A DNA stretch of 64,000 nucleotides from IMGVR_UViG_3300019776_000324:124001-188000, one strand, 5' to 3'; positions 30,033-62,210 are shown, numbered from the stretch's first letter. Notes: generated by a model not told the origin, from the sequence alone. Numbers and translations are program-made.

Positions 30033-30995
30033 ATGATTGATGTGGTTTCTTTTTTACCTGCTAAACGAAAACAAACAAGTTCTGGTTGGATAAGTTTCAA
30101 CGCACCTTGTTGTGTGCATCGTGGCGACTCACAAGACAAGCGACAGCGTGGCGGACTTAAACCCGGCACAGATGGTTCGTGGTCATATCATTGTTTCAAC
30201 TGTGGCTATACTGCCTCGTTTGTGCTAGGCCGCAATCTGACATTCAAAGCTCGTCGATTACTAGAGTGGCTTAATGTGCCCACAGAAGAAATAGAACGAA
30301 TCAATCTTGAAAGTTTAAAGCATAGATCAATCGAAGGCTTATTAGGCGAGCGTCAAGAAGTAATACAAAAATTACAAAGTATTGAATTTGAAGATAGAGA
30401 TTTACCTGCAGATACATACCCACTCAATGACACAGCTACAGAATATTTAAAAAATAGATGCGTTCCACTAGACTATCCATTCCTGTATAAAACAATGCCA
30501 CGCCCCGGAGTTGTAATTCCCTTTACACACGATAATCAAGTAGTAGGACATACAACACGATTCTTAGATGATCGAACTCCTAGATATATTCAAGACATAC
30601 AACACGGTTATGTGTTTGGCACAGACTTGCAAAAAGATTCATGGCAATCAGTGATTGTTGTTGAAGGTGTATTTGATGCATTAAGCATTGATGGGCTTGC
30701 AGTGTTGCATGCCGAGATCAACGATGCACAAGTTAGACTAATACGCAGTCTAGGACGAGAAGTTGTTGTAGTCCCGGATCAAGATGAAGCTGGTATAAAA
30801 CTAGTAGATCGTGCTGTGGAACTAGGGTGGGCAGTAAGCATACCCGAGTGGCCAGAAGGCATCAAAGATGTCAATGACGCTGTAATTCGTTTGGGTAGAC
30901 TTGGAACTTTGCTAATTATAATGCAAGCCAAAGAAACTAGTAAAATTAAAATAGAACTAAGGAAGAAACAACTTGTTAAAAGACTACGGACTTGA
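30033..30995 (+). CDS. gp61: DNA primase (gp61-like)
   Basis: Zn-binding PCC/HCFNC, TOPRIM VEGVFDA, PDQDEAG, KDVND; TTGATC-17-TATAAT upstream. Confidence 0.85.
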   Translation: MIDVVSFLPAKRKQTSSGWISFNAPCCVHRGDSQDKRQRGGLKPGTDGSWSYHCFNCGYTASFVLGRNLTFKARRLLEWLNVPTEEIERINLESLKHRSIEGLLGERQEVIQKLQSIEFEDRDLPADTYPLNDTATEYLKNRCVPLDYPFLYKTMPRPGVVIPFTHDNQVVGHTTRFLDDRTPRYIQDIQHGYVFGTDLQKDSWQSVIVVEGVFDALSIDGLAVLHAEINDAQVRLIRSLGREVVVVPDQDEAGIKLVDRAVELGWAVSIPEWPEGIKDVNDAVIRLGRLGTLLIIMQAKETSKIKIELRKKQLVKRLRT

Positions 30996-32385
30996 TGTCC
31001 AAAAACTATTCTTAGAAATGATGTTGCAAGACGCAGAGTCGTATGTGCGTGTGCAGAACATTTATAACCCAGAAAACTTTGATAGAAGTTTGCGCCCAGT
31101 AGCAGAGTTTATTGCCACTCACAGCAATGAATATAAAACATTGCCTGGCACAGAACAGATCAAAGCAGCAACAGGTGTACAACTAAATCATATTCCAGAG
31201 TTGAACGACGGTCACTTTGAGTGGTTTATGAATGAGTTCGAAGGGTTTACTCGCAGACAAGAACTTGAACGAGCAATTTTAAAGAGTGCAGACTTGTTGG
31301 AAAAGGGCGAGTATGATCCGGTAGAGAAACTGATCAAAGATGCAGTACAAATTAGTTTGACCAAGGACATGGGTACAGATTACTTTGCTGATCCAAGACT
31401 TCGTATTGACAAGTACTTTAATTCAGGTGGACAAGTAAGCACAGGTTGGCCACAGATGGACAAGATCTTGTATGGTGGATTTAGTCGTGGAGAACTTAAC
31501 ATTTTTGCAGGTGGTTCTGGTTCAGGTAAATCACTTGTTATGATGAACATAGCATTGAGTTGGTTGCAAGCAGGACTCAGTGGTGTGTATATTAGTTTGG
31601 AACTCTCTGAAGAACTATGTGCCCTGCGTACTGATGCCATGTTGGCAGGTATGAGTACCAAAGAGATTCGCAAAGATATTGATCAGACTGAACTCAAAGT
31701 CAAACTTGTAAGCAAGAAGTCTGGACAGTATCGTATTAAAGCATTGCCAGCACAGAGCAACATTAACGATATCCGTAGTTACATCAAAGAAGTGCAAGTG
31801 CAAACAGGTATCAAAGTAGACTTTATCATGTGTGACTACTTGGACTTGTTGATGCCAGTTAGTGCCAAAGTTAGCCCAAATGACTTGTTTGTCAAAGACA
31901 AATATGTGTCAGAAGAATTGCGTAACTTGGCCAAAGAACTTAATGTGTTGTTTGTAACTGCATCACAGTTGAATCGTAGTGCGGTAGAAGAAGTAGAATT
32001 TGATCATAGTCATATTTCGGGTGGTATCAGTAAGATCAATACTGCAGATAATGTGTTTGGTATCTTTACAAGTAGAGCTATGCGTGAGCGTGGCAAGTAT
32101 CAAATTCAGTGTATGAAATCTCGTAGTAGTACAGGTGTTGGCATGAAGATTGATTTGGACTATAACATTGAAACCATGCGTATTACTGATCCTGGAGAAG
32201 ATGCTGGCCCAGTTAATTCATTTGGTCGAGGCAATTTGTTAGACAGTATCAAAGCTAAAAGTACAATGACTGCCGCTACGCCTCCGGGTCCGTTTGGTAA
32301 TTCCAACGACAATGATGGCAAAATTACAGCAGATGTACAAAGCGCCAAGTTAAAACAATTGCTAGGGCAAATCAAACAGTCATAA
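30973..32385 (+). CDS. gp41: Replicative DnaB-like helicase (gp41-like)
   Basis: GGSGSGKS, SLELSE, DYLDL, TASQLNR, MKSR. Confidence 0.92.
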   Translation: MLKDYGLDVQKLFLEMMLQDAESYVRVQNIYNPENFDRSLRPVAEFIATHSNEYKTLPGTEQIKAATGVQLNHIPELNDGHFEWFMNEFEGFTRRQELERAILKSADLLEKGEYDPVEKLIKDAVQISLTKDMGTDYFADPRLRIDKYFNSGGQVSTGWPQMDKILYGGFSRGELNIFAGGSGSGKSLVMMNIALSWLQAGLSGVYISLELSEELCALRTDAMLAGMSTKEIRKDIDQTELKVKLVSKKSGQYRIKALPAQSNINDIRSYIKEVQVQTGIKVDFIMCDYLDLLMPVSAKVSPNDLFVKDKYVSEELRNLAKELNVLFVTASQLNRSAVEEVEFDHSHISGGISKINTADNVFGIFTSRAMRERGKYQIQCMKSRSSTGVGMKIDLDYNIETMRITDPGEDAGPVNSFGRGNLLDSIKAKSTMTAATPPGPFGNSNDNDGKITADVQSAKLKQLLGQIKQS

Positions 32386-33374
32386 TGCAAACTTGTATTG
32401 ATGCTTTTAAAAATCTCAATGTTGTAAAATATGGTAATCAATTATCGTTATCGCCTTGTTGCGTGTCTCCTCCAAGACTAGCAGATAAGATTGAATTTTA
32501 CGATAACCAACATTTAAAACAAATCAGAGAACAATGGACGCAGGGTAATTTTCCAGCCGCATGTTCATCTTGTCAAGCAGCAGAAAAATCCACAGGATCC
32601 AGTCGGCGAATACACAGCAATCAGTGGTATCAAGATCATGGGTATTATAACAATACTGTTGAAATGCTACGATTGGATTATTGGACTGGTGACCAATGTA
32701 ACTTGGCTTGTGCTATATGCGGACCACACAGCAGTAGCACTTGGAAGCAAGAACTAAAACTAGAAATTCCATTGGAAAAAACAATAATTAATCATTTTTG
32801 GAAAACATTGGATTTAACACAATTAAAATTTGTACATTTCAATGGTGGTGAGCCATTGCTTAGTAAAGAACATGTTAATTTTTTACAGTCAATACCCGAT
32901 AAAAAACAAGTACAACTTAATTACAATACCAATGCTACAATATTGCCCAGCAAACAATTGTTAGAGTTGTGGGAGCAGTTTGATTTAATTAAACTTGATT
33001 TTAGCATTGATGATATTGCAGCAAGATTTAATTACCAACGGTACCCAGCTGATTGGACCCGAGTGACCAATAACCTACAGTGGTTTGTAGATCAAAGCCC
33101 GCACAATTGTATGTTGGCTGTAAACACCTCTATCAGTGTGTTAAATCACTATACTATTGCAGATTTAGATCTATGGTTAAATCAGAATTTTTACATCAGT
33201 CGTTTTGGTGATCAAATTGAACATCGCCGACAACCTGTAACAGGCATTTTAGCCTTGGATAACATCAAATACCCTTACAAAATACAGGATTATTTAAATT
33301 CCTTAGATAACCGCCGCAATACCAACTGGGAATCAACATTTCCTGAGTTAAAAAGTATCTTATTAAACCCTTAA
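32385..33374 (+). CDS. Radical SAM protein with N-terminal SPASM/twitch-like Cys cluster
   Basis: CNLACAIC (CxxxCxxC), GGEPL, YNTN, SID; N-terminal PCC...C..C. Confidence 0.85.
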   Translation: MQTCIDAFKNLNVVKYGNQLSLSPCCVSPPRLADKIEFYDNQHLKQIREQWTQGNFPAACSSCQAAEKSTGSSRRIHSNQWYQDHGYYNNTVEMLRLDYWTGDQCNLACAICGPHSSSTWKQELKLEIPLEKTIINHFWKTLDLTQLKFVHFNGGEPLLSKEHVNFLQSIPDKKQVQLNYNTNATILPSKQLLELWEQFDLIKLDFSIDDIAARFNYQRYPADWTRVTNNLQWFVDQSPHNCMLAVNTSISVLNHYTIADLDLWLNQNFYISRFGDQIEHRRQPVTGILALDNIKYPYKIQDYLNSLDNRRNTNWESTFPELKSILLNP

Positions 33375-33408: not shown

Positions 33409-33657
33409 ATGCAAAAGAAAACTCGCAGTTTATTAGAAGAATTAGACTCAATGTACATTGAGCGTGATCAACGCCATGTTATTGAAAACCGTGCATCTAA
33501 CATTATTGCTAGTGCTATTCGTTTACTTGAACAAATTGAAGAAAGTTATAGTCCTGAAGTAGCACAGAATTTACAGCGTAAATTGCTCAATGCTATTAAT
33601 CAACGCGACCCTGGTAAGTTTACAAGAACCGTGAGAAAAACAGATGCAAATTCATGA
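33409..33657 (+). CDS. Hypothetical late protein
   Basis: 82 aa; TAAATA at 33382-33387. Confidence 0.65.
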   Translation: MQKKTRSLLEELDSMYIERDQRHVIENRASNIIASAIRLLEQIEESYSPEVAQNLQRKLLNAINQRDPGKFTRTVRKTDANS

Positions 33658-34354
33658 AATAACAACAACTAAATTAAATGAAGGCATTGTTGATGCTATT
33701 AAATCCGGCTTTGCTGGAGCTAAACAAGGCTATAAAATAAGCCAAACTAATCGTGCAATACAAATGATAGCTGACAAAGCCTATCCAATTTGGGTAAACT
33801 ACGCCAAACGATTAGAGCAATCAATTACAGATCCTAGAGCCAAACAGGCATTTAATAATCGCACTGACGGTCTTTATCAAAAGGCCCTTACTGCATTTGT
33901 ACAGAAAAACTTATTAAAAAATGTTGGAATCAACGACGCTATTAATAAAGATCAGATTGTTGGTTTAATTAAACAACTAAGCGAGCCTAAAATTGCAGTA
34001 GCAAAACCTGCACCAGCTTCACCTGCGCCAGCACCACAAGCACAATCTACTATAGTTAATCCGGCAACCAATAAACCCTTTACGCCTGCCCCAGTGTCAG
34101 AAGCACTAAATTCAAATACAGAAAAACAATTGTTTACACAGTTGGTACAAGTTGCTAGTTTGGCTCAAGCTGACCCAACTAAACAACAAACTCAAGGTGG
34201 TGCGCAACTTATCAGTCAAGATCCTGCGATTGTTAAATTTGACGGAAGAACATACGGATTAAATGACAACGGAGAATGGGCTGATATTAAAACTTCCAGA
34301 CAGCCAGAACCATCTGTAAACGCATATCTAGATCAAGTAGCAGGTATTGCCTAA
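33644..34354 (+). CDS. Hypothetical (putative internal head) protein
   Basis: Starts MQIHEITTTKLNE; Pro/Ala linker. Confidence 0.55.
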   Translation: MQIHEITTTKLNEGIVDAIKSGFAGAKQGYKISQTNRAIQMIADKAYPIWVNYAKRLEQSITDPRAKQAFNNRTDGLYQKALTAFVQKNLLKNVGINDAINKDQIVGLIKQLSEPKIAVAKPAPASPAPAPQAQSTIVNPATNKPFTPAPVSEALNSNTEKQLFTQLVQVASLAQADPTKQQTQGGAQLISQDPAIVKFDGRTYGLNDNGEWADIKTSRQPEPSVNAYLDQVAGIA

Positions 34355-34355
34355 G

Positions 34356-36308
34356 ATGAATATCTTTGAAGGTGGAAATGTCTTTAAGGACGGCGATGGT
34401 CGCGCACTAACACAGCGTATCAATCAGACTGATGTAAAAACTACATTGGCATGGTTAGAGGAAATGCTTCCTAGTTTAGATTTACAAAATAATACTCTTG
34501 GGTCAACTGGTATTAAAGATACATCTGGTGACTTGGATATTGCCATCGATGCAACCAAATACACTAAAGAACAATTAGTAGCCGAGCTAACTCGCTGGGT
34601 ATTGAGCCAAAAACAAAAGCCCGAAGACTGGGTTAAGAAAACCGGTAGTGCAGTGCATTTTAAAACGCCAATTAACGGCAATCCTAACAACGGATATGTG
34701 CAAACTGATTTTATGTTTTTAAACAATGTACCTTGGTCAAAGTTTGTACTGGGTGCCATGCCCGCAGACAGCAAGTACAAAGGCCGTGAGCGCAATGTGT
34801 TAATGAATAGTATTGCCAAGAGCATGGGTTACAAGCTAAATCAAAATGCAGGTATTGCTGACCGTGCAACCAATGAGCTTATTACTGACGATCCTGATAA
34901 GGTTGCTAAAATATTGTTAAACAAAACAGCTACCAGACAAGACTTAGCATCAGTAGAAACTATACTACAAGCATTAAGCACAGATCCTAATCGTGACGCT
35001 AAACTAGCAGACTTTAAAGCTCACATGGAACGCGAAGGGTTACCGTTTCTAGAATCTACAATGGAAAGCACTGACTTATATCAACCAGTTAGTGATGTAA
35101 ACTTCTTAGCTCGTTTGCGTGACCGCATTGTCAATCAAGGCATGCAACCTATATTTGAAGGAGTAATGCCACAGGTCGGCGGTCGTGCTAAAGGTATCGA
35201 ACATATTGAAGATTTAGTATTCCGTAATGGAACAAAAGGTATTCAACAAGCTCTAGATGTTATTGAGCACATGAAAACCGACACAAAGAAATCTACCACA
35301 GTTAAGTGGGACGGTAAACCTGCCTTGGTATTTGGACGCATGCCCGACGGCGGATTTGTATTAACTGATGTGAGTGGATTTACTGCTAAAGGATACGATG
35401 GTTTATTCCGTAGCCCCAAACAAGCAATTAAATTATTAGCTCAGCGTGATGCAGATGCCGAAGCTCAAGGTAAACCTGCAACTCGTGTTGAAACACTAGG
35501 ACCACTTTATCAAAAGTTATTTCCTATGTTAGAAGCTGCTGTTCCAGAAAACTTTAAAGGTTTTATACAAGGCGATTTGTTATACACACAAACTCCTCCT
35601 GAGCAAGCAGGTAATTTAGTATTTCAACCTAACACTATTGCGTATAGTATTCCTGCTGCTAGTAAGTTAGGCCAAGAAATTGCCGATAGTGAAGTAGGTA
35701 TTGCCATCCATACTCGTTATAAAGAACCTGGAGCCGCTAAACAACCCCTGGGCCGTCCTAATTTAAATCCAGTTAACGGACTTTTATTAATGGAGCCAAT
35801 ACATCCTACTGAGAATGTAGAGCCTGTTGACAGCAAGAGTGTTAAGCAGTTAAAACAATTAGTTACTAAACACGGTGCCGCAATTGATGGCTTGTTTAAT
35901 CCCAATGATTTGCGAGCAGCACAAGTAACAGACCTACCCAAGCTATGTATTGATTATATTAATTGGACTATTCATAATTCAGGAAATGATAACCAGTATA
36001 TTAATAATTTTGATCCTGTAAACTTCCTTAGAGAATTTGTTGGGGCATATCTCCGTGGTGCAGTTAGCGAACGTAAGTATCAAAACATTGGGCAGTACAT
36101 TACAAGTCCAAGAAGTAATCAAGTTGGCATAACAGCGGCCTTTACGGCATTTATTCTACTGCACAATATTAAAATGGACATCCTGCAACAACTAGATCGC
36201 CAGGTTCCTGGACAAGAGGGTTGGGTAGTTACAGTGCCAGGCGGAGTGGTTAAGTTTGTTAATCGCTTTGAATTTACCCGTGCAAATCGCCTAGTAAACC
36301 CCAAATAA
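34356..36308 (+). CDS. Pol-beta-type nucleotidyltransferase fused to a ligase-like (KxDG) domain
   Basis: LGSTG...GDLDI...VQTD in the N-half; TVKWDG, QGDLL, EGWV, KFVNR in the C-half; probable start MNIFE. Confidence 0.6.
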   Translation: MNIFEGGNVFKDGDGRALTQRINQTDVKTTLAWLEEMLPSLDLQNNTLGSTGIKDTSGDLDIAIDATKYTKEQLVAELTRWVLSQKQKPEDWVKKTGSAVHFKTPINGNPNNGYVQTDFMFLNNVPWSKFVLGAMPADSKYKGRERNVLMNSIAKSMGYKLNQNAGIADRATNELITDDPDKVAKILLNKTATRQDLASVETILQALSTDPNRDAKLADFKAHMEREGLPFLESTMESTDLYQPVSDVNFLARLRDRIVNQGMQPIFEGVMPQVGGRAKGIEHIEDLVFRNGTKGIQQALDVIEHMKTDTKKSTTVKWDGKPALVFGRMPDGGFVLTDVSGFTAKGYDGLFRSPKQAIKLLAQRDADAEAQGKPATRVETLGPLYQKLFPMLEAAVPENFKGFIQGDLLYTQTPPEQAGNLVFQPNTIAYSIPAASKLGQEIADSEVGIAIHTRYKEPGAAKQPLGRPNLNPVNGLLLMEPIHPTENVEPVDSKSVKQLKQLVTKHGAAIDGLFNPNDLRAAQVTDLPKLCIDYINWTIHNSGNDNQYINNFDPVNFLREFVGAYLRGAVSERKYQNIGQYITSPRSNQVGITAAFTAFILLHNIKMDILQQLDRQVPGQEGWVVTVPGGVVKFVNRFEFTRANRLVNPK

Positions 36309-36340: not shown

Positions 36341-36348
36341 TATAAATA
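36341..36348 (+). promoter_or_regulatory. Late promoter TATAAATA
   Basis: Exact consensus upstream of AAGGAG SD and ATG 36390. Confidence 0.75.
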
Positions 36349-36389: not shown

Positions 36390-36788
36390 ATGGCTTATAT
36401 TACTAAAGTTTCTGGTGGATCACAACCAGTATTCGCATCTGACGTATTGAACGGTCCAGTTGCACAAACAGCAAACATCGCTACTCAAGGTCCTGTACAA
36501 GTTGCTGGTCCTAAGTTAGACTTTTACACATTCACAGCTAACGCTGCGTTGACAACAGCTGGTGGTGTAAATGGTTTCGTTGCTAACGTTATCCAAGCAG
36601 TTCAACAAACAACTACAGTTGCTATGTACCAAGTTACAACAGGTACAACAATCGCAGTTGCTACATACCCAACTGGCGCATTTGCTAACGTTGCTACAGC
36701 TTTAGCTGCTGCACAATCTGCAAACGGCACAATCGGTATCAGTTCTGCTACTGGCACAGCTGCATTCACAAACTTAGCTGATCTATAA
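36390..36788 (+). CDS. Probably abundant small virion protein
   Basis: 132 aa Ala/Thr-rich, biased codons, own promoter, strong SD and terminator. Confidence 0.6.
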   Translation: MAYITKVSGGSQPVFASDVLNGPVAQTANIATQGPVQVAGPKLDFYTFTANAALTTAGGVNGFVANVIQAVQQTTTVAMYQVTTGTTIAVATYPTGAFANVATALAAAQSANGTIGISSATGTAAFTNLADL

Positions 36789-39549: not shown

Positions 39550-39933
39550 ATGGCCTATTCAGAAAAAGTAATCGATCACTATGAAAATCCACGAAATGTG
39601 GGCAAGTTGGAAATAGACGACACTATAGGTACAGGTATGGTTGGTGCTCCTGCTTGTGGTGATGTAATGAAGCTACAAATCAAAGTCAAAGATGGAATTA
39701 TTACAGATGCGAAATTTAAAACATATGGCTGTGGGTCAGCGATCGCGAGTAGTTCGCTCGTTACGGAATGGGTCAAGGGTAAAACGCTGGAGCAAGCTGG
39801 ATCTATTAAGAATGTGCAGATTGCAGAGGAGCTCGCATTACCCCCGGTTAAGATCCATTGCAGTATCCTTGCGGAAGACGCTATTAAAGCCGCTATAGCA
39901 GACTATAGAGCCAAGCATGATAACTCTAACTGA
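39550..39933 (+). CDS. iscU: Fe-S cluster scaffold IscU
   Basis: MAYSEKVIDHYENPRNVG, APACGDVM, GCGSAIAS, LPPVKIHCS; TTGTAA-17-TATAAT upstream. Confidence 0.97.
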   Translation: MAYSEKVIDHYENPRNVGKLEIDDTIGTGMVGAPACGDVMKLQIKVKDGIITDAKFKTYGCGSAIASSSLVTEWVKGKTLEQAGSIKNVQIAEELALPPVKIHCSILAEDAIKAAIADYRAKHDNSN

Positions 39934-53349: not shown

Positions 53350-54729
53350 ATGAACACCATAGACTTTACCGGTGATCAATTTAACGAGATCAAAGTGGCC
53401 GCAGACTGGATTAGAGACCTAGAAGCAAGCGACAGCCGTTTACACAAAGAATCAGTAATAGAGAAGGCCCTAATGGCAAGTAAGTTAGGGTCCTCTAATG
53501 CTCAATGCTTCTTGTTCAACTGCTACCAAGCCTACAACCCCTACTATGTGTTTGGCGTTAAGAAGGTTCCAGAGACTGTAGGATTAGAAAATAAACCTAA
53601 TCCTTGGCCAAAGTTTTGGGCCATGTTAGAAGGTTTGCGTACTCGTAGTCTTACCGGACATAATGCTAAAACAGCCATTGAGTTTATGAGTGAACAGTTT
53701 GACTCAGTTGAGTGGAATGGTCTTGCTCGTAGAGTTATTATCAAAGACCTACGCTGTGGCATTAGTGAAAAGACCCTAAACAAGGTGCTTGGCAACACAG
53801 AATGGAAGATCCCAGTGTTTACTTGTCAACTAGCTACAGACAGCGAAAAGCACACAGCCAAGATGACTGGCAAAAAACGCATTGAACAAAAGTTAGATGG
53901 TGTGCGTGTGTTGGCAGTAGTAACCAAGACCACAGTTAATCTATACAGTCGCAATGGTAAACCCTTTGATAACTTTCCGCATATTGTAGAGTCGTTAGAA
54001 GATATTAAAAATAAGTTTGCTCGATTACTTCAATCCAATCCTCATGGTTTTGTATTAGATGGCGAGATCATTGGTGAAAGTTTCCAGGCCTTAATGAAAC
54101 AAGCACAACGCAAGAGTGATGTGCAAACAACAGGCATGACATATAGTGTGTTTGATTGGGTTCCATTAGCAGGATTTGAACATGGTTTTTGGAACGCTCA
54201 ACAATATAAACGATTAGAAATTCTTGAAGGATATCGCGCAGTGTTTGACTCAACTGATTGTGTGCGTCTTATGGACGGTATTGAAGTTGACTTGGACACA
54301 GCTGAAGGACATGATGTTATGCGTCGCTATGCTGAAGATGCTGTAGAGGCAGGCTTTGAAGGTATTATGATTAAAGACCTAGGAGCACCATATGAGTGTC
54401 GTCGTAGTACATTTTGGATGAAGTGGAAGCCTACTATTACAGTAGACTTAAATATTATTGGATTTGAAGAAGGCACAGGTCGTAATGCAGGTCGATTGGG
54501 TGCTATAATTTGCGAAGGAGATGATAATGGTCGTCGTATTAATGTTAATGTGGGCAGTGGCCTTTCCGATGCTAATCGTGATGAATATTGGAGTGCCCGA
54601 GATCAGTTACTTGGCGATGTTATTGAAGTCGAAGCAGACGCAGTAACACAAAACCAAGATGGCACTTACAGTTTGCGATTTCCTCGCTTTGTTCGTTTCC
54701 GTGGATTTGAACCTGGAGAAAAATTATGA
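53350..54729 (+). CDS. ATP-dependent DNA ligase
   Basis: KLDGVR, LDGE, EGIMIK, WMKWK, SLRFPRF. Confidence 0.95.
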   Translation: MNTIDFTGDQFNEIKVAADWIRDLEASDSRLHKESVIEKALMASKLGSSNAQCFLFNCYQAYNPYYVFGVKKVPETVGLENKPNPWPKFWAMLEGLRTRSLTGHNAKTAIEFMSEQFDSVEWNGLARRVIIKDLRCGISEKTLNKVLGNTEWKIPVFTCQLATDSEKHTAKMTGKKRIEQKLDGVRVLAVVTKTTVNLYSRNGKPFDNFPHIVESLEDIKNKFARLLQSNPHGFVLDGEIIGESFQALMKQAQRKSDVQTTGMTYSVFDWVPLAGFEHGFWNAQQYKRLEILEGYRAVFDSTDCVRLMDGIEVDLDTAEGHDVMRRYAEDAVEAGFEGIMIKDLGAPYECRRSTFWMKWKPTITVDLNIIGFEEGTGRNAGRLGAIICEGDDNGRRINVNVGSGLSDANRDEYWSARDQLLGDVIEVEADAVTQNQDGTYSLRFPRFVRFRGFEPGEKL

Positions 54730-58416: not shown

Positions 58417-59613
58417 ATGTCAGAAGCACTAACTCACTGTAGTTTTTGTGACAAGCATAGAAACCAGCTTGGCAAGTTGATTGTTAGCCACAAGGTTGCT
58501 ATCTGTAACGAATGCATTGATCTGTGTAGCAACCTGTTAAAAGACACAGCAAAAACAACAAACACTACTAAAAAATCTGTACCAGATCCTAGAGACATCA
58601 GAGATTATCTCGATGAGCGAGTGATAGGTCAAGACCGTGCTAAGATCATTTTGTCGGTGGCCATTGCTAATCACTATAAACGCATTAACAATTTAAACTC
58701 TGGGCACAACATTGACAAAGGCAATATTTTAATGATAGGGCCAACTGGCACAGGTAAAACATTGTTGGCTCGTAGTGTAGCAGAATACTTAGATGTGCCA
58801 TTTGTAGTAGCAGATGCAACCACATTAACTGAAGCTGGATATGTAGGAGACGATGTTGAAAGTTTAATTGCTAGATTGTACACAGCCGCTGATAACGATA
58901 TTGAACGCTGTCAGCGTGGTATTATATTCCTCGATGAAATAGATAAAATCAGTCGTAAAAGCGAAAGCTCAACAGTAAGCAAGGATGTGTCTGGTGAAGG
59001 AGTTCAACAGGCATTGCTTAAATTAATTGAAGGAACTAAGTGTAAGATTATACCACAAGGATCAAGAAAACAATCAACTAGTGATGGTATAGAAATTGAC
59101 ACCACTAATATACTGTTTGTGGCTGGCGGTGCTTTTGTTGGCCTGGAAAACATTGTTAAAAACAGAGTGCAAGGTACAAGTATAGGATTCAATGCTCAAG
59201 TTGGCGCTGAAAATGTTGATCTAGCAGAAGTAACTCCCGACGACTTGGTACGCTATGGATTGATTCCAGAATTTGTTGGTCGATTCAGCAGTTATGTAAG
59301 TTTACACAGTTTGACCAAGGAGCAACTGGTACAGATCTTAACTGAAGTTAAGAATAACTTTGTTGGTCAATACAAATGGTTGTTTGATCAAGACGGTGTA
59401 GAACTAGCATTTGATCCAGCTAGTTTAGAACTAATAGCAGATCGCACACTGCAAACCAAGACCGGTGCTCGTGGCCTACACACTGAATTAGAGCGTATAT
59501 TGATGCCTCATATGTTTGATTTACCTAGATACAAAAAGAACAACATTTTACAGTTGACAATCAATAAAACCCAGGTAAATACTCCTATGACACTATTGCA
59601 GGAAAATCAATGA
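58417..59613 (+). CDS. clpX: ATP-dependent Clp protease ATPase ClpX
   Basis: CSFC...CNEC zinc domain, [39 protein letters not shown]. Confidence 0.95.

Positions 59614-60283: not shown

Positions 60284-62210
<1,927 letters not shown>

What the first reader, a model, noticed from the sequence alone, without database searches (positions are those of the whole stretch)
34356..36308. Nucleotidyltransferase-ligase fusion with apparent head-protease sites: injected nucleic-acid repair or signalling enzyme?
Seen: the N-half has the pol-beta NTase signature (GS...DLD...D). The C-half has covalent nucleotidyltransferase/ligase-like motifs (KWDG, QGD, EGWV, K). The protein starts MNIFE and the linker carries FLE, TME and IFE, and the gene lies among late virion genes, not replication genes. 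A separate normal DNA ligase exists at 53350. Inference: a packaged polyprotein cut into an NTase and an RNA-ligase-like enzyme, which could repair host-cleaved tRNA/RNA, nucleotidylate proteins or make nucleotide signals right after injection.
Basis: partly seen in the sequence, partly recalled or inferred. Interest (0 to 1): 0.75.

Follow-up and report, generated by a model that had tools for sequence, protein, structure and literature searches.

The report
Phage polymerase-X plus ligase fusion enzyme
This jumbo T4-like phage gene fuses a very small family-X-type polymerase to an uncharacterised ligase-like enzyme (DUF6267). It is most likely a fill-and-seal repair enzyme encoded next to the replication genes, and there is no positive evidence that it is a virion polyprotein.

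Summary
The ORF (34356-36308, +, 650 aa) and the reported motifs are real and conserved. More than 4,000 same-length homologues exist in metagenomes.

- **N-half (aa 1-235).** The confident AlphaFold model matches family X DNA polymerases (Pol beta, lambda, TdT, ASFV Pol X) over palm plus thumb (Z 9-10.7). Other Pol-beta-type NTases match only the palm core. G49-S50, D59, D61 and D118 are conserved; G52, D59, D61 and D118 are invariant.
- **C-half (aa 278-650).** This is Pfam DUF6267. Its model matches only covalent nucleotidyltransferases (RNA and DNA ligases, capping enzymes), at modest Z (about 7). Ligase motifs I (K317-W-D-G), III, IV (E621-G-W-V) and V (K633...R637) are invariant or nearly so. 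There is no OB domain; a 125-aa helical insertion sits between motifs IIIa and IV.
- **Context.** The gene follows primase-helicase, as its relatives do in Atu_ph07, Melnitz and cyanomyoviruses. DUF6267 is a core gene of all 16 cyanomyoviruses compared by Sullivan et al. 2010, a group reported to lack a gp30-type ligase.
- **Head-protease idea.** A gp21-type protease exists in the genome. [LI]xE motifs are not enriched in the protein, and homologues were not reported in four virion proteomes. Two boundary sites are conserved, so packaging is not excluded.

Best reading: a bifunctional gap-filling and nick-sealing enzyme. This is a new variant of a known kind.

The parts
34356..36308 (+). Whole gene: 650-aa PolX-like / DUF6267 ligase-like fusion protein
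   Evidence: ORF. More than 4,342 homologues, the best 120 of them 606-654 aa and 69-100% identical. 1,716 cluster representatives hit.
34356..35060 (+). N-domain (aa 1-235): minimal family-X polymerase-like palm plus thumb
   Evidence: AF2 model pLDDT 92. Foldseek E about 1e-4 and VIA Z 10.7 to Pol beta/lambda. In the unbiased scan the top 10 are all family X. Swiss-Prot models: B. subtilis PolX, Pol lambda, Pol beta, TdT.
34368..34388 (+). Near-invariant N-terminal motif E5-G-G-N-V-F-K11, preceded by [LI]3
   Evidence: E5, G6, G7, N8, F10 and K11 are at least 90% conserved in 60 diverse homologues, including internal copies in multidomain proteins. In structural alignments it overlays Pol beta residues about 98-108.
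34500..34538 (+). NTase catalytic signature G49-S50-T-G52...S57-G58-D59-L-D61
   Evidence: G52, D59 and D61 invariant; G49, S57 and G58 at least 90% conserved.
34707..34709 (+). Third catalytic carboxylate D118 (in V-Q-T-D-F-M-F)
   Evidence: Invariant in 60 sequences.
35061..35186 (+). Interdomain linker (aa 236-277) with conserved helix D247-M263, F[ML]E 231-233 just upstream and [LI]xE 266-268
   Evidence: pLDDT is 57-82 in the N model and below 50 for aa 266-278 in the C model. Helix 247-263 is nearly invariant among 137 fused homologues. TME 236-237 is an insertion in only a few.
35187..36305 (+). C-domain (aa 278-650): DUF6267, covalent nucleotidyltransferase (ligase-like) fold
   Evidence: PF19782 E 3.6e-34. 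AF2 pLDDT 90. Best structural matches are NgrRnl, TbREL1, Trl1, DNA ligases I/III/IV, T4 Rnl2 and Rnl1, and capping enzymes. AFDB cluster 'RNA ligase domain-containing protein', E 2e-6.
35196..35213 (+). Conserved I281-E-H283-I-E285-D286 motif at the start of the C-domain
   Evidence: E285 and D286 invariant; I281 and H283 at least 90% conserved. Cyanophage DUF6267 proteins start almost directly at this motif.
35304..35315 (+). Ligase motif I, K317-W-D-G320 (predicted AMP-accepting lysine)
   Evidence: K, D and G invariant in 51 sequences, including P-HM1 and Melnitz.
35571..35585 (+). Motif III-like G406-D407-L-L-Y410
   Evidence: D407 and L409 at least 90% conserved.
35622..35645 (+). Motif IIIa-like F423-x-P425-N-x-x-x-Y430
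   Evidence: P425 and Y430 invariant; F423 at least 90% conserved.
35832..36203 (+). About 125-aa all-helical insertion between motifs IIIa and IV (aa 493-616), with invariant K606
   Evidence: DSSP of the AF2 model: helices 243-366 of the fragment. It lies outside most of the 165-183 residues that align to ligases.
36216..36227 (+). Motif IV, E621-G-W-V624
   Evidence: E, G and V invariant.
36252..36266 (+). Motif V-like K633-F-V-N-R637
   Evidence: K633 at least 90% conserved, R637 invariant. The ends of the structural alignment (model 396-397 to NgrRnl 339) are compatible with motifs IV and V lying near their NgrRnl counterparts (the residue-level mapping is inferred).
33409..34354 (+). Two tightly coupled upstream genes (82 aa and 236 aa) in the same gene string
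   Evidence: Overlapping starts and stops. The 82-aa protein belongs to phrog_11854 and is homologous to Atu_ph07 gp068 'virion structural protein' (E 2e-10). The same order is seen in L011 and L012.
30033..32385 (+). DNA primase and DnaB/gp41-type helicase: the conserved upstream neighbourhood
   Evidence: phrog_47 E 1.5e-38 and phrog_19 E 3.2e-70. Helicase-then-DUF6267 synteny in P-HM1, Melnitz, S-CAM4, S-RIM2, Atu_ph07 and a 48%-identical relative.
53350..54729 (+). Separate canonical ATP-dependent DNA ligase (not part of the fusion; relevant comparison)
   Evidence: PF01068 8e-20 plus DNA_ligase_OB_2. It is the only PF01068/PF09414 match in the genome.

Best explanation
The gene encodes a bifunctional nucleic-acid repair or maturation enzyme made of two active modules.

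**Module 1, aa 1-235.** This is a stripped-down family-X-type polymerase with palm plus thumb and no 8-kDa or fingers domains, comparable in size to ASFV Pol X. It would extend a 3'-OH at a gap, nick or break by two-metal catalysis using D59, D61 and D118. The G49-S50-T-G-x-K54 loop would hold the triphosphate.

**Module 2, aa 278-650 (DUF6267).** This is a divergent ATP-dependent polynucleotide ligase.
- K317 of motif I would be adenylylated.
- AMP would pass to a 5'-phosphate.
- The nick would then be sealed with help from motifs III, IV and V.
- Instead of an OB or DNA-binding domain it carries a 125-aa helical insertion, which probably supplies the nucleic-acid clamp.

**Biological role.** The gene is encoded in the primase-helicase string. 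The enzyme most likely fills and seals gaps or nicks in phage DNA, possibly with a ribonucleotide at the 3' side, during replication, recombination or damage repair. It would act alongside the phage's canonical gp30-type ligase.

**Shown:** conservation of the catalytic motifs, the predicted folds, the fusion and adjacency patterns, and the synteny.

**Inferred:** the substrates (DNA versus RNA, dNTP versus rNTP), ATP as cofactor, the cooperation of the two domains, and cytoplasmic rather than virion action.
For: - **N-domain fold.** AF2 pLDDT 92. All top-10 hits in an unbiased scan of 48,161 PDB representatives are family X polymerases, with 158-180 residues aligned over palm plus thumb (Z 7.1-10.2). 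TUTases, CD-NTases, PAP and CCA enzymes align over only about 88 residues, at Z 7 or less. Searches agree.
- **N-domain catalytic residues.** The catalytic triad and glycine-rich loop are invariant or near-invariant in 60 homologues.
- **C-domain fold.** AF2 pLDDT 90. Ranks 1-30 and 32-36 of the unbiased scan are RNA ligases, DNA ligases, capping enzymes and one NAD-ligase adenylation domain (Z 4.3-7.0); rank 31 is snurportin-1's cap-binding domain.
- **C-domain motifs.** Motifs I, III, IIIa, IV and V occur in the canonical order, with invariant K317, D319, G320, E621, G622 and R637.
- **Association of the two domains.** They occur standalone, fused in either order, and fused with CTP_transf_like or HAD phosphatase domains. 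In Atu_ph07 the PolX-like gene (E 3e-20) overlaps a KxDG...EGVV protein that weakly hits PF09414 RNA_ligase and is named RNA ligase in UniProt.
- **Synteny.** The position after primase-helicase is conserved across distant T4-like phages.
- **Phyletic pattern.** DUF6267 (T4-GC71) is in all 16 cyanomyoviruses and none of 10 gp30-bearing T4-likes. Cyanomyoviruses are reported to lack gp30 (PMC2984593). PF01068 and PF01653 are absent from P-HM1, S-CAM4, S-RIM2 and Melnitz.
Against: - No sequence profile links either half to a named polymerase or ligase family. Pfam, NCBIfam and PDB HMM searches found nothing. hhalign to the window's own ligase found nothing.
- The C-domain structural scores are individually in the 'middling' range (Z 7.6 or less).
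- Motif V has K...R rather than KxK.
- There is no OB domain.
- The closest solved structures to the C-domain are RNA ligases rather than DNA ligases, so the substrate could be RNA.
- The phage already has a canonical DNA ligase, so a DNA nick-sealing role would be partly redundant.
- No activity, expression-timing or localisation data exist for any family member. No paper mentions DUF6267.
- The frequent partner, a cytidylyltransferase-like domain, has no obvious place in a simple fill-and-seal scheme.
Confidence: 0.55

Rival explanations
1. RNA repair enzyme. The PolX-like NTase restores nucleotides lost from cleaved tRNA or mRNA ends, and the DUF6267 module is an RNA ligase that rejoins them. 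This would counter host anticodon nucleases or other RNase defences, like the RlaP-RNA ligase pairs and the T4 Pnkp/Rnl1 system.
For: - The best structural matches of the C-domain are RNA ligases: NgrRnl/Rnl5, TbREL1, Trl1 and T4 Rnl2.
- An AFDB cluster hit is named RNA ligase domain protein.
- The C-domain has no OB domain, as in RNA ligases.
- The Atu_ph07 partner of the PolX-like gene weakly hits PF09414 RNA_ligase.
- Pol-beta NTase plus RNA ligase pairing is an established theme in jumbo phages (RlaP; PMC7824862).
- Some relatives carry HAD phosphatase domains that could heal 3'-phosphate ends.
Against: - The N-domain matches DNA polymerases of family X over palm plus thumb, not RlaP. There is no PF10127 hit. 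RNA-specific NTases match only the palm core.
- The genome has no PNK3P-type end-healing enzyme and no Rnl1 (the Rnl1 search had no positive control).
- The gene is 170 kb from the tRNA cluster.
- It is syntenic with primase-helicase in every relative examined.
- The Z-score margin of RNA over DNA ligases is small (7.0 against 6.2).
Confidence: 0.2
2. The protein is targeted to the prohead, cut by the gp21-type prohead protease at [LI]xE sites into separate NTase and ligase enzymes, packaged, and injected with the DNA to act immediately after infection.
For: - The genome encodes a Peptidase_S77 (T4 gp21-type) protease.
- [LI]xE lies at aa 3-5 and at 266-268, exactly before each domain. Both sites are conserved in 137 fused homologues.
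- Most non-cyanophage standalone homologues have a short leader ending in a hydrophobic-x-E just before the conserved core. These recall T4 capsid-targeting leaders (from memory, not tested).
- The adjacent 82-aa gene is homologous to a virion protein of Atu_ph07.
- The conserved partner cytidylyltransferase (T4-GC190) was detected in S-SM1 virions.
- A TATAAATA late-promoter-like motif lies just downstream, at 36341.
Against: - Motif density is at or below the genome background.
- FLE and IFE are no better conserved than the surrounding, nearly invariant linker. TME is not conserved.
- E5-G-G-N-x-F-K is a conserved part of the domain itself, also present at internal positions of multidomain proteins.
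- Only 4 residues precede E5, which is too short for a T4-type targeting leader.
- Cyanophage DUF6267 proteins have no leader at all. They have no proteomic detection in the cyanophage table covering three virion proteomes.
- Atu_ph07 gp065 and gp066 are annotated as hypothetical, unlike the neighbours gp068 and gp072, which are annotated as virion structural proteins after a survey that added 112 virion-associated proteins.
- The TATAAATA motif precedes the next gene, not this one.
Confidence: 0.13
3. Not a nucleic-acid end-joining enzyme. The two NTase modules, together with the recurrent cytidylyltransferase-like partner, would make or transfer nucleotides for another purpose, such as a nucleotide second messenger, a cofactor, a DNA modification, or nucleotidylation of a protein.
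For: - CTP_transf_like (PF01467) domains recur, fused in every order or encoded by the adjacent gene.
- A radical-SAM gene lies between the helicase and this gene string.
- No biochemical data exist for DUF6267.
Against: - CD-NTases and OAS match only the palm core, at Z 5-6, whereas PolX matches palm plus thumb.
- All structural relatives of the C-domain act on polynucleotide 5' ends.
- In this genome the CTP_transf_like genes are far away, at about 203, 265 and 273 kb.
Confidence: 0.07

Closest known systems
ASFV DNA polymerase X (174 aa minimal family-X polymerase), working with the ASFV DNA ligase in viral base-excision repair
   Same: The N-domain superposes on 158 of 176 residues of AsfvPolX (Z 9.1). 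Like it, the N-domain has only palm plus thumb, with no 8-kDa or fingers domains. The virus pairs it with an ATP-type ligase (AsfvLIG is among the C-domain matches).
   Different: Here polymerase and ligase are one polypeptide. There is no detectable sequence-profile similarity to PolX families. An extra conserved N-terminal E-G-G-N-x-F-K motif and C-terminal helices (aa 200-235) are present. The host is a bacterium, not an animal cell.
Bacterial LigD (NHEJ ligase-polymerase-phosphoesterase fusion)
   Same: The logic is the same: a gap-filling or end-extending polymerase fused to an ATP-dependent ligase, with phosphatase domains added in some relatives (HAD/NT5C fusions). The M. tuberculosis LigD ligase domain is among the structural matches (Z 4.9).
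   Different: The LigD polymerase is an archaeo-eukaryotic primase-type enzyme, not PolX. The LigD ligase has an OB domain and hits PF01068, whereas DUF6267 does neither. No Ku partner was looked for.
Rnl5-type nick-sealing RNA ligases (Naegleria gruberi NgrRnl, Deinococcus DraRnl), plus Rnl2/REL1
   Same: These are the best structural matches to the C-domain NTase core (Z 7.0-7.6, about 180 residues). They share the KxDG...EG...K motif order and the lack of a C-terminal OB domain.
   Different: NgrRnl has an N-terminal OB-like domain; this protein has a PolX module and a long helix instead. DUF6267 has a 125-aa helical insertion between motifs IIIa and IV. No ligase profile hits it.
RlaP (PF10127) Pol-beta NTases associated with RNA ligases in phages
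   Same: A Pol-beta-superfamily NTase is genetically coupled to a ligase in jumbo phages (PMC7824862).
   Different: There is no PF10127 match. The fold match is to family X polymerases, including the thumb. The context is replication genes rather than RNA-repair genes.
Pfam DUF6267 (PF19782) / cyanophage T4-GC71
   Same: The C-half is a bona fide member (E 3.6e-34, above the cut-off). The family is a core gene of T4-like cyanophages.
   Different: The family has no assigned function. In cyanophages it is standalone (about 300-400 aa) and followed by a cytidylyltransferase-like gene. Here it is fused to a PolX-like module.

Membership tests
Family X DNA polymerases | Pol-beta-type palm with hG[GS]-x(8-9)-DxD and a third catalytic Asp | tested here: met
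   G49-S50...D59-x-D61 and D118. G52, D59, D61 and D118 are invariant and G49 is at least 90% conserved in 60 homologues.
Family X DNA polymerases | Palm plus thumb architecture superposable on solved PolX enzymes | tested here: met
   Predicted model only. Z 9.1-10.7 with 158-180 residues aligned to Pol beta 139-335, Pol lambda 337-575, TdT, Tth PolX and AsfvPolX. Other NTase families match only the palm.
Family X DNA polymerases | 8-kDa dRP-lyase and fingers (helix-hairpin-helix) domains | tested here: not met
   The domain is only about 235 aa. Alignments start at Pol beta residue about 100-140. This is the same reduction as in ASFV Pol X.
Family X DNA polymerases | Match to PolX sequence profiles (Pfam DNA_pol_B_palm/thumb) or to PolX chains by sequence | tested here: not met
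   No Pfam hit at E up to 1. The PDB profile search found no PolX. Only a language-model hint links it to clusters carrying DNA_pol_B_palm/NTP_transf_2.
Family X DNA polymerases | Template-directed or terminal nucleotide addition to a primer 3'-OH | not testable with these tools
   Needs a primer-extension assay.
ATP-dependent polynucleotide ligases / covalent nucleotidyltransferase superfamily | Motif I KxDG with an invariant lysine | tested here: met
   K317-W-D319-G320 is invariant in 51 sequences, including cyanophage and Melnitz proteins.
ATP-dependent polynucleotide ligases / covalent nucleotidyltransferase superfamily | Motifs III, IIIa, IV and V in canonical order | tested here: inconclusive
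   G-D407-L-L-Y, F423-x-P-N-x-x-x-Y430, E621-G-W-V and K633-x-x-x-R637 are conserved and in order. Motif V is K...R rather than KxK. A 125-aa insertion separates IIIa and IV. The residue-level equivalence was inferred from alignment ranges only.
ATP-dependent polynucleotide ligases / covalent nucleotidyltransferase superfamily | Nucleotidyltransferase (adenylation) domain fold | tested here: met
   Predicted model. Ranks 1-30 and 32-36 of 48,161 PDB representatives are ligases, capping enzymes or an NAD-ligase adenylation domain, and rank 31 is snurportin-1's cap-binding domain. Z is only 4.3-7.0 there and 7.6 or less.
ATP-dependent polynucleotide ligases / covalent nucleotidyltransferase superfamily | C-terminal OB-fold domain (DNA ligases, capping enzymes) | tested here: not met
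   The protein ends 13 residues after R637. No OB strands appear in the model.
ATP-dependent polynucleotide ligases / covalent nucleotidyltransferase superfamily | Match to ligase sequence profiles (PF01068, PF09414, PF09511) | tested here: not met
   None of 49 members hits a ligase family; the best is RNA_lig_T4_1 at E 0.26 in one member. The PDB profile search was negative. hhalign against the window's own ligase was negative.
ATP-dependent polynucleotide ligases / covalent nucleotidyltransferase superfamily | Formation of lysyl-AMP and sealing of 3'-OH/5'-PO4 nicks | not testable with these tools
Rnl5 (NgrRnl/DraRnl) RNA ligases | N-terminal OB-like domain preceding the NTase domain | tested here: not met
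   In most rows only NgrRnl 143-339 (the NTase domain) aligns. Upstream of the C-domain NTase lie a long helix, the linker and the PolX module.
RlaP (PF10127) | Match to the PF10127 profile | tested here: not met
   Not listed at E up to 1.
Pfam DUF6267 (PF19782) | Profile match above the gathering cut-off | tested here: met
   119.2 bits against a cut-off of 27, aa 281-644 covering profile positions 4-371 of 376.
T4-type capsid-targeted, gp21-processed internal proteins | gp21-type prohead protease encoded by the phage | tested here: met
   PF03420, 82 bits, at G000 89271-89714.
T4-type capsid-targeted, gp21-processed internal proteins | [LI]xE cleavage motifs at functional boundaries, more than expected by chance | tested here: inconclusive
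   Motifs at aa 3-5 and 266-268 are conserved. Overall density is 0.77 per 100 aa against 0.95 genome-wide. The first motif is part of a conserved domain motif.
T4-type capsid-targeted, gp21-processed internal proteins | N-terminal targeting leader of about 10 aa | tested here: not met
   Only M-N-I-F precedes E5, or 7 residues from the TTG start.
T4-type capsid-targeted, gp21-processed internal proteins | Protein present in purified virions | not testable with these tools
   Indirect evidence only. Homologues were not reported in the S-SM1, S-PM2, Syn9 or Atu_ph07 virion proteomes.

The most novel reading that the evidence does not exclude
The PolX-ligase protein, and its standalone relatives that carry short leaders ending in hydrophobic-x-Glu, would be capsid-targeted internal proteins. 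The gp21-type prohead protease would trim them at the conserved [LI]xE sites before each domain. They would then be injected with the genome as a ready-made 'DNA repair kit' that fills and seals nicks or breaks made by host defences before any phage gene is expressed. A second, more probable novel reading (about 0.4) is that DUF6267 is the long-missing ligase of T4-like cyanophages.
Probability: 0.12. Interest if true: 0.8.

Novelty: new variant of a known kind. Interest (0 to 1): 0.58.

Why it matters
- **A function for DUF6267.** The family has thousands of members and no assigned function, and no held paper mentions it. The evidence here assigns it a concrete, testable activity: a divergent polynucleotide ligase without an OB domain and with a helical insertion.
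- **A new enzyme architecture.** This is a previously undescribed fusion of a minimal family-X polymerase with a ligase. It is a phage counterpart of the ASFV Pol X/ligase pair and of bacterial LigD, built from different parts.
- **A link to a 15-year-old gap.** T4-like cyanophages have the full T4 replisome but no recognisable gp30 ligase (PMC2984593). DUF6267 is a core gene of all 16 cyanomyoviruses compared by Sullivan et al. 2010. In the three examined here it lies 2-3 kb downstream of gp41, which makes it the obvious candidate for the missing ligase.
- **Possible use as a tool.** A compact fill-and-seal enzyme could also have value in molecular biology.

Tried and rejected
- **Sequence-only links to known families.** Pfam, PHROGs, NCBIfam, PDB phmmer and PDB profile searches gave only DUF6267 and phrog_455.
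- **hhalign of the C-domain profile.** Comparison with the window's own DNA ligase and with Atu_ph07 gp066 gave no significant match, apart from a short motif-I stretch.
- **Profile bridge through Atu_ph07 gp066.** Only 3 close homologues exist, too few for a profile.
- **Cyanophage neighbours as hidden PolX-like domains.** PHM1_160, PHM1_163, Melnitz_15 and _18, and S-RIM2 SWTG_00142 and _00144 showed no similarity by BLASTP or hhalign.
- **Structure prediction with two GenBank-derived rows.** I rebuilt the alignment without those rows.
- **Co-folding the C-domain with ATP.** The tool did not fold it. This is not evidence either way.
- **Expression timing from cyanophage transcriptome supplements.** The tables held no class for this gene.
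- **Atu_ph07 supplementary proteome table.** It was not searchable by gene name, so I relied on the GenBank product names.
- **T4 late-promoter motif TATAAATA.** It is not enriched in the window (7 found against 5.5 expected). None precedes this gene. The nearest precedes the next ORF.
- **Burroughs & Aravind 2016 (RNA repair systems).** The paper is not held.


Full report
**1. What is at the coordinates**

A single ORF runs from the ATG at 34356 to the stop at 36306-36308 on the + strand and encodes 650 aa. A TTG nine bases upstream is an alternative start. The ATG lies two bases after the stop of the preceding ORF, so the two genes are translationally coupled.

The window is bases 124001-188000 of a complete 344,244-bp virus genome with direct terminal repeats. 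This is a jumbo phage with T4-like genes:
- large terminase, UvsX-like recombinase and helicases;
- primase and a DnaB/gp41-type helicase;
- ribonucleotide reductase, dCMP deaminase, an exonuclease and an ATP-dependent DNA ligase;
- a gp21-type prohead protease elsewhere in the genome.

**2. The observation**

The catalytic ones are far more than chance strings.

N-half, from 60 diverse homologues taken from a 50%-identity representative library:
- Invariant: T30, G52, D59, D61, P105, G108, D118, G166.
- At least 90% conserved: E5, G6, G7, N8, F10, K11, R21, G49, S57, G58, H101 and others.

C-half, from 49-51 diverse homologues including Prochlorococcus phage P-HM1 and Methylophilales phage Melnitz:
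- Invariant: E285, D286, K317, D319, G320, P425, Y430, H452, K606, E621, G622, V624, R637, F640.
- At least 90% conserved: D407, K633.

The separate DNA ligase at 53350 is canonical, with PF01068 plus an OB domain.

Two parts of the observation do not hold.
- The gene does not lie among late virion genes. It is the fifth gene of a co-oriented, tightly packed string: primase, helicase, a radical-SAM protein, an 82-aa protein, a 236-aa protein, then this gene.
- The 'protease sites' are not enriched. [LI]xE occurs 0.77 times per 100 aa here against 0.95 genome-wide.

**3. The N-half is a minimal family-X polymerase-like module**

No sequence profile recognises it.

AlphaFold2 with the 60-sequence alignment gave a confident model: pLDDT 92.2, with aa 11-230 mostly above 95.

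Structure searches agree:
- Foldseek against the PDB returned only family X polymerases in the top 50 (E about 1e-4, probability 1.0).
- Re-alignment gave Z 10.7 over 160-180 residues, covering Pol beta 100/139-335 and Pol lambda 337-575, that is palm plus thumb.
- An independent scan of 48,161 PDB representatives put ten family X enzymes first: the Pol beta palm-thumb fragment, Leishmania Pol beta, TdT, Tth PolX, Pol lambda, ASFV Pol X, Pol mu and Deinococcus PolX.
- ASFV Pol X scored Z 9.1 with 158 of its 176 residues aligned.
- TUTases, poly(A) polymerases, CCA enzymes, CD-NTases, OAS and MenT matched only the roughly 88-residue palm core, at Z 7 or less.
- Swiss-Prot models gave the same order, with B. 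subtilis PolX first.

The module therefore has the PolX palm and thumb but lacks the 8-kDa and fingers domains, like ASFV Pol X.

From memory, not tested: the loop G-S-T-G-x-K...S-G-D-L-D resembles the Pol beta G-S-F-R-R-G...S-G-D-M-D loop. The segment G-Y-K-L-N-Q resembles the thumb motif of ASFV Pol X.

**4. The C-half (DUF6267) is a ligase-type covalent nucleotidyltransferase**

Pfam assigns aa 281-644 to DUF6267 (E 3.6e-34). No paper in the held library mentions this family. No ligase profile hits any of 49 members.

The AlphaFold2 model is confident: pLDDT 90.2, pTM 0.87.

Structure searches:
- Foldseek gave weak scores (E 0.02 or worse). Most of the better hits were DNA ligase IV, ASFV ligase, archaeal ligases, Trl1, T4 Rnl1 and Rnl3, with some unrelated Fdc decarboxylase entries mixed in.
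- VIA re-alignment gave Z 7.6 for the NTase domain of Naegleria RNA ligase and Z 6-6.8 for Trl1, DNA ligase I/IV and T4 Rnl1.
- In the unbiased scan, ranks 1-30 and 32-36 are RNA ligases, DNA ligases, capping enzymes and an NAD-ligase adenylation domain. Rank 31 is snurportin-1's cap-binding domain.
- An AFDB cluster named 'RNA ligase domain-containing protein' matched at E 2e-6.

Each Z value is in the range the tool calls middling. The argument therefore rests on three things together:
- the near-exclusive family composition of the hit lists;
- the canonical order of the conserved motifs I (K317-W-D-G), III (G-D407-L-L-Y), IIIa (F423...Y430), IV (E621-G-W-V) and V (K633...R637);
- the ends of the alignment ranges, which are compatible with motifs IV and V lying near their NgrRnl counterparts (inferred).

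Differences from known ligases:
- There is no OB domain.
- A helical insertion of about 125 aa (aa 493-616) sits between motifs IIIa and IV.
- A conserved I-E-H-I-E-D motif and a 30-residue helix lie ahead of motif I.

**5. The two modules belong together**

In the representative library the two domains occur in several arrangements:
- standalone;
- fused N-C, as here;
- fused C-N;
- in 800-1,300-aa proteins with a cytidylyltransferase-like domain (PF01467) in every order;
- occasionally with HAD-type phosphatase domains (NT5C, DUF2608).

In Agrobacterium jumbo phage Atu_ph07 the PolX-like gene gp065 (E 3e-20 to our N-half) overlaps the end of gp066. That protein carries K-L-D-G...E-G-V-V...K-x-K, weakly hits PF09414 RNA_ligase, and is named RNA ligase in UniProt. 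A PolX-like module is thus paired with a KxDG ligase in a second, independent form.

**6. Genomic context**

The order primase, helicase, small protein, roughly 230-aa protein, then the fusion recurs in a 48%-identical relative and in Atu_ph07.

In P-HM1, S-CAM4, S-RIM2 and Melnitz, standalone DUF6267 lies 2-3 kb downstream of gp41 and is followed by a cytidylyltransferase-like gene.

In the supplementary table of Sullivan et al. 2010, DUF6267 is T4-GC71. It is present in all 16 cyanomyoviruses and in none of the 10 other T4-like phages.

A 2010 review states that cyanomyoviruses have the T4 replisome genes but no homologue of gp30 DNA ligase. It leaves open whether a distant homologue exists (PMC2984593). 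I confirmed that P-HM1, S-CAM4, S-RIM2 and Melnitz contain neither PF01068 nor PF01653, whereas the present genome has PF01068.

The phyletic complementarity is suggestive, but it amounts to one clade against another.

**7. Most likely mechanism**

The most economical reading is a fill-and-seal enzyme.
- The PolX-like module extends a 3'-OH at a gap, nick or break.
- The DUF6267 module is adenylylated on K317 and seals the resulting nick.
- The gene is expressed with replication genes.

The likeness of the C-domain to nick-sealing RNA ligases (Rnl5, Rnl2/REL1) suggests a preference for a 3'-ribonucleotide at the nick. The LigD precedent points the same way (established knowledge, not tested here). 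That preference is inference. I put this overall reading at about 0.55.

**8. Rivals**

(a) RNA repair, in the manner of RlaP-RNA ligase pairs, at about 0.2.
- For: the RNA-ligase-like fold and the HAD fusions.
- Against: the PolX thumb, the replication synteny, the absence of a PNK3P end-healing enzyme, and a tRNA cluster 170 kb away.

- For: the genome has a gp21-type protease.
- For: [LI]xE at aa 3-5 and 266-268 precede the two domains and are conserved in 137 fused homologues.
- For: many standalone relatives have short leaders ending in hydrophobic-x-E.
- For: the partner cytidylyltransferase was found in S-SM1 virions.
- Against: the first site is part of a near-invariant domain motif that also occurs internally.
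- Against: the linker around the second site is conserved throughout.
- Against: cyanophage DUF6267 proteins have no leader.
- Against: T4-GC71 has no proteomic detection.
- Against: Atu_ph07 gp065 and gp066 are not among its proteins annotated as virion proteins after mass spectrometry, while the neighbours gp068 and gp072 are.

(c) Nucleotide signalling, cofactor synthesis or protein nucleotidylation, at about 0.07. It is motivated mainly by the unexplained cytidylyltransferase partner.

**9. Comparison with the known, and novelty**

The closest known systems are:
- ASFV Pol X with the ASFV ligase;
- bacterial LigD;
- Rnl5 and Rnl2 RNA ligases;
- RlaP-ligase pairs.

The protein is a member of Pfam DUF6267. 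It cannot be filed in any named polymerase or ligase family by sequence.
- It meets the fold and catalytic-motif criteria of family X polymerases and of covalent nucleotidyltransferases.
- It fails the profile-membership criteria for both.
- It fails the accessory-domain criteria: no 8-kDa or fingers domain, and no OB domain.

I rate it a new variant of a known kind. The fusion and the functional reading of DUF6267 appear undescribed. The chemistry proposed is conventional.

**10. Limits**

- All structural evidence comes from predicted models.
- Residue-level superposition could not be inspected.
- No experimental data exist for any family member.
- Localisation and timing are inferred from homologues' annotations.

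Noticed in passing
window 36341-36348 (also 14957, 17268, 28791, 60078): Exact TATAAATA (the T4 late-promoter consensus) lies on the + strand a few to about 40 bases upstream of ORF starts, including the Ala/Thr/Gly-rich 132-aa ORF at 36390 directly after the target gene. The total count is not above chance (7 against 5.5 expected), but the placement before ORF starts is suggestive.
   Followed up: partly
relatives: L001 5239-7133, L006 4390-7452, L002 5598-7547; P0139, P0141, P0145, P0151, P0163, P0201; own genome G000 203361, 265398, 272881: A cytidylyltransferase-like domain (PF01467) is the constant companion of DUF6267. It is the adjacent gene in the cyanomyoviruses examined and is fused in every order in metagenomic proteins. 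In S-RIM2 it is part of a 1,021-aa protein. Sullivan et al. 2010 detected it (T4-GC190) in S-SM1 virions. Its role next to a ligase is unexplained. In this genome the PF01467 genes are far from the target.
   Followed up: partly
window 33409-33657: The 82-aa ORF just upstream belongs to phrog_11854 and is homologous (E 2e-10) to Atu_ph07 gp068, annotated as a virion structural protein. It keeps the same position between the helicase and the PolX/ligase genes in both phages.
   Followed up: partly
homologues P0260, P0248, P0215, P0209, P0205, P0219, P0252, P0201 (N-termini): Standalone PolX-like and DUF6267 proteins from non-cyanophage sources start with short leaders of the type M-[KR]-h-x-x-[DE]-[LF]...h-x-E placed directly before the conserved core. 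Cyanophage DUF6267 proteins lack them. They recall T4 capsid-targeting leaders (from memory), and I could not test that.
   Followed up: partly
window 32385-33374: A radical-SAM protein (PF04055 below its Pfam cut-off, PF13353 just above; phrog_14086) is inserted directly after the helicase, overlapping its stop. It is absent from the same position in L012 and Atu_ph07.
   Followed up: no
window 60582-62210 and 58417-59613: The phage encodes a full-length GroEL-like chaperonin (phrog_5725, E 9e-179). Next to it is an AAA+ ATPase with hits to ATP-dependent protease and clamp-loader families.
   Followed up: no
window 39550-39933: A NifU-like Fe-S cluster assembly gene (phrog_8429, E 3e-43) lies among the nucleotide-metabolism genes. 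A Fe-S_biosyn gene occupies a similar position in the relative L012.
   Followed up: no
L012 4842-7037: In the 48%-identical relative the DnaB-type helicase is 731 aa and carries faint intein/HINT hits, which suggests an intein. The helicase in this window (470 aa) has none.
   Followed up: no
G000 330354-341019 (outside the window): A cluster of 28 tRNA genes lies near the right end of the genome. None is in the window.
   Followed up: yes
window 35094-35144 (aa 247-263): The interdomain helix D-V-N-F-L-A-R-L-R-D-R-I-V-N-Q-G-M is nearly invariant among 137 fused homologues. It also appears at the N-terminus of some standalone DUF6267 proteins (e.g. P0180). It may be a docking or nucleic-acid-binding element rather than a passive linker.
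   Followed up: partly
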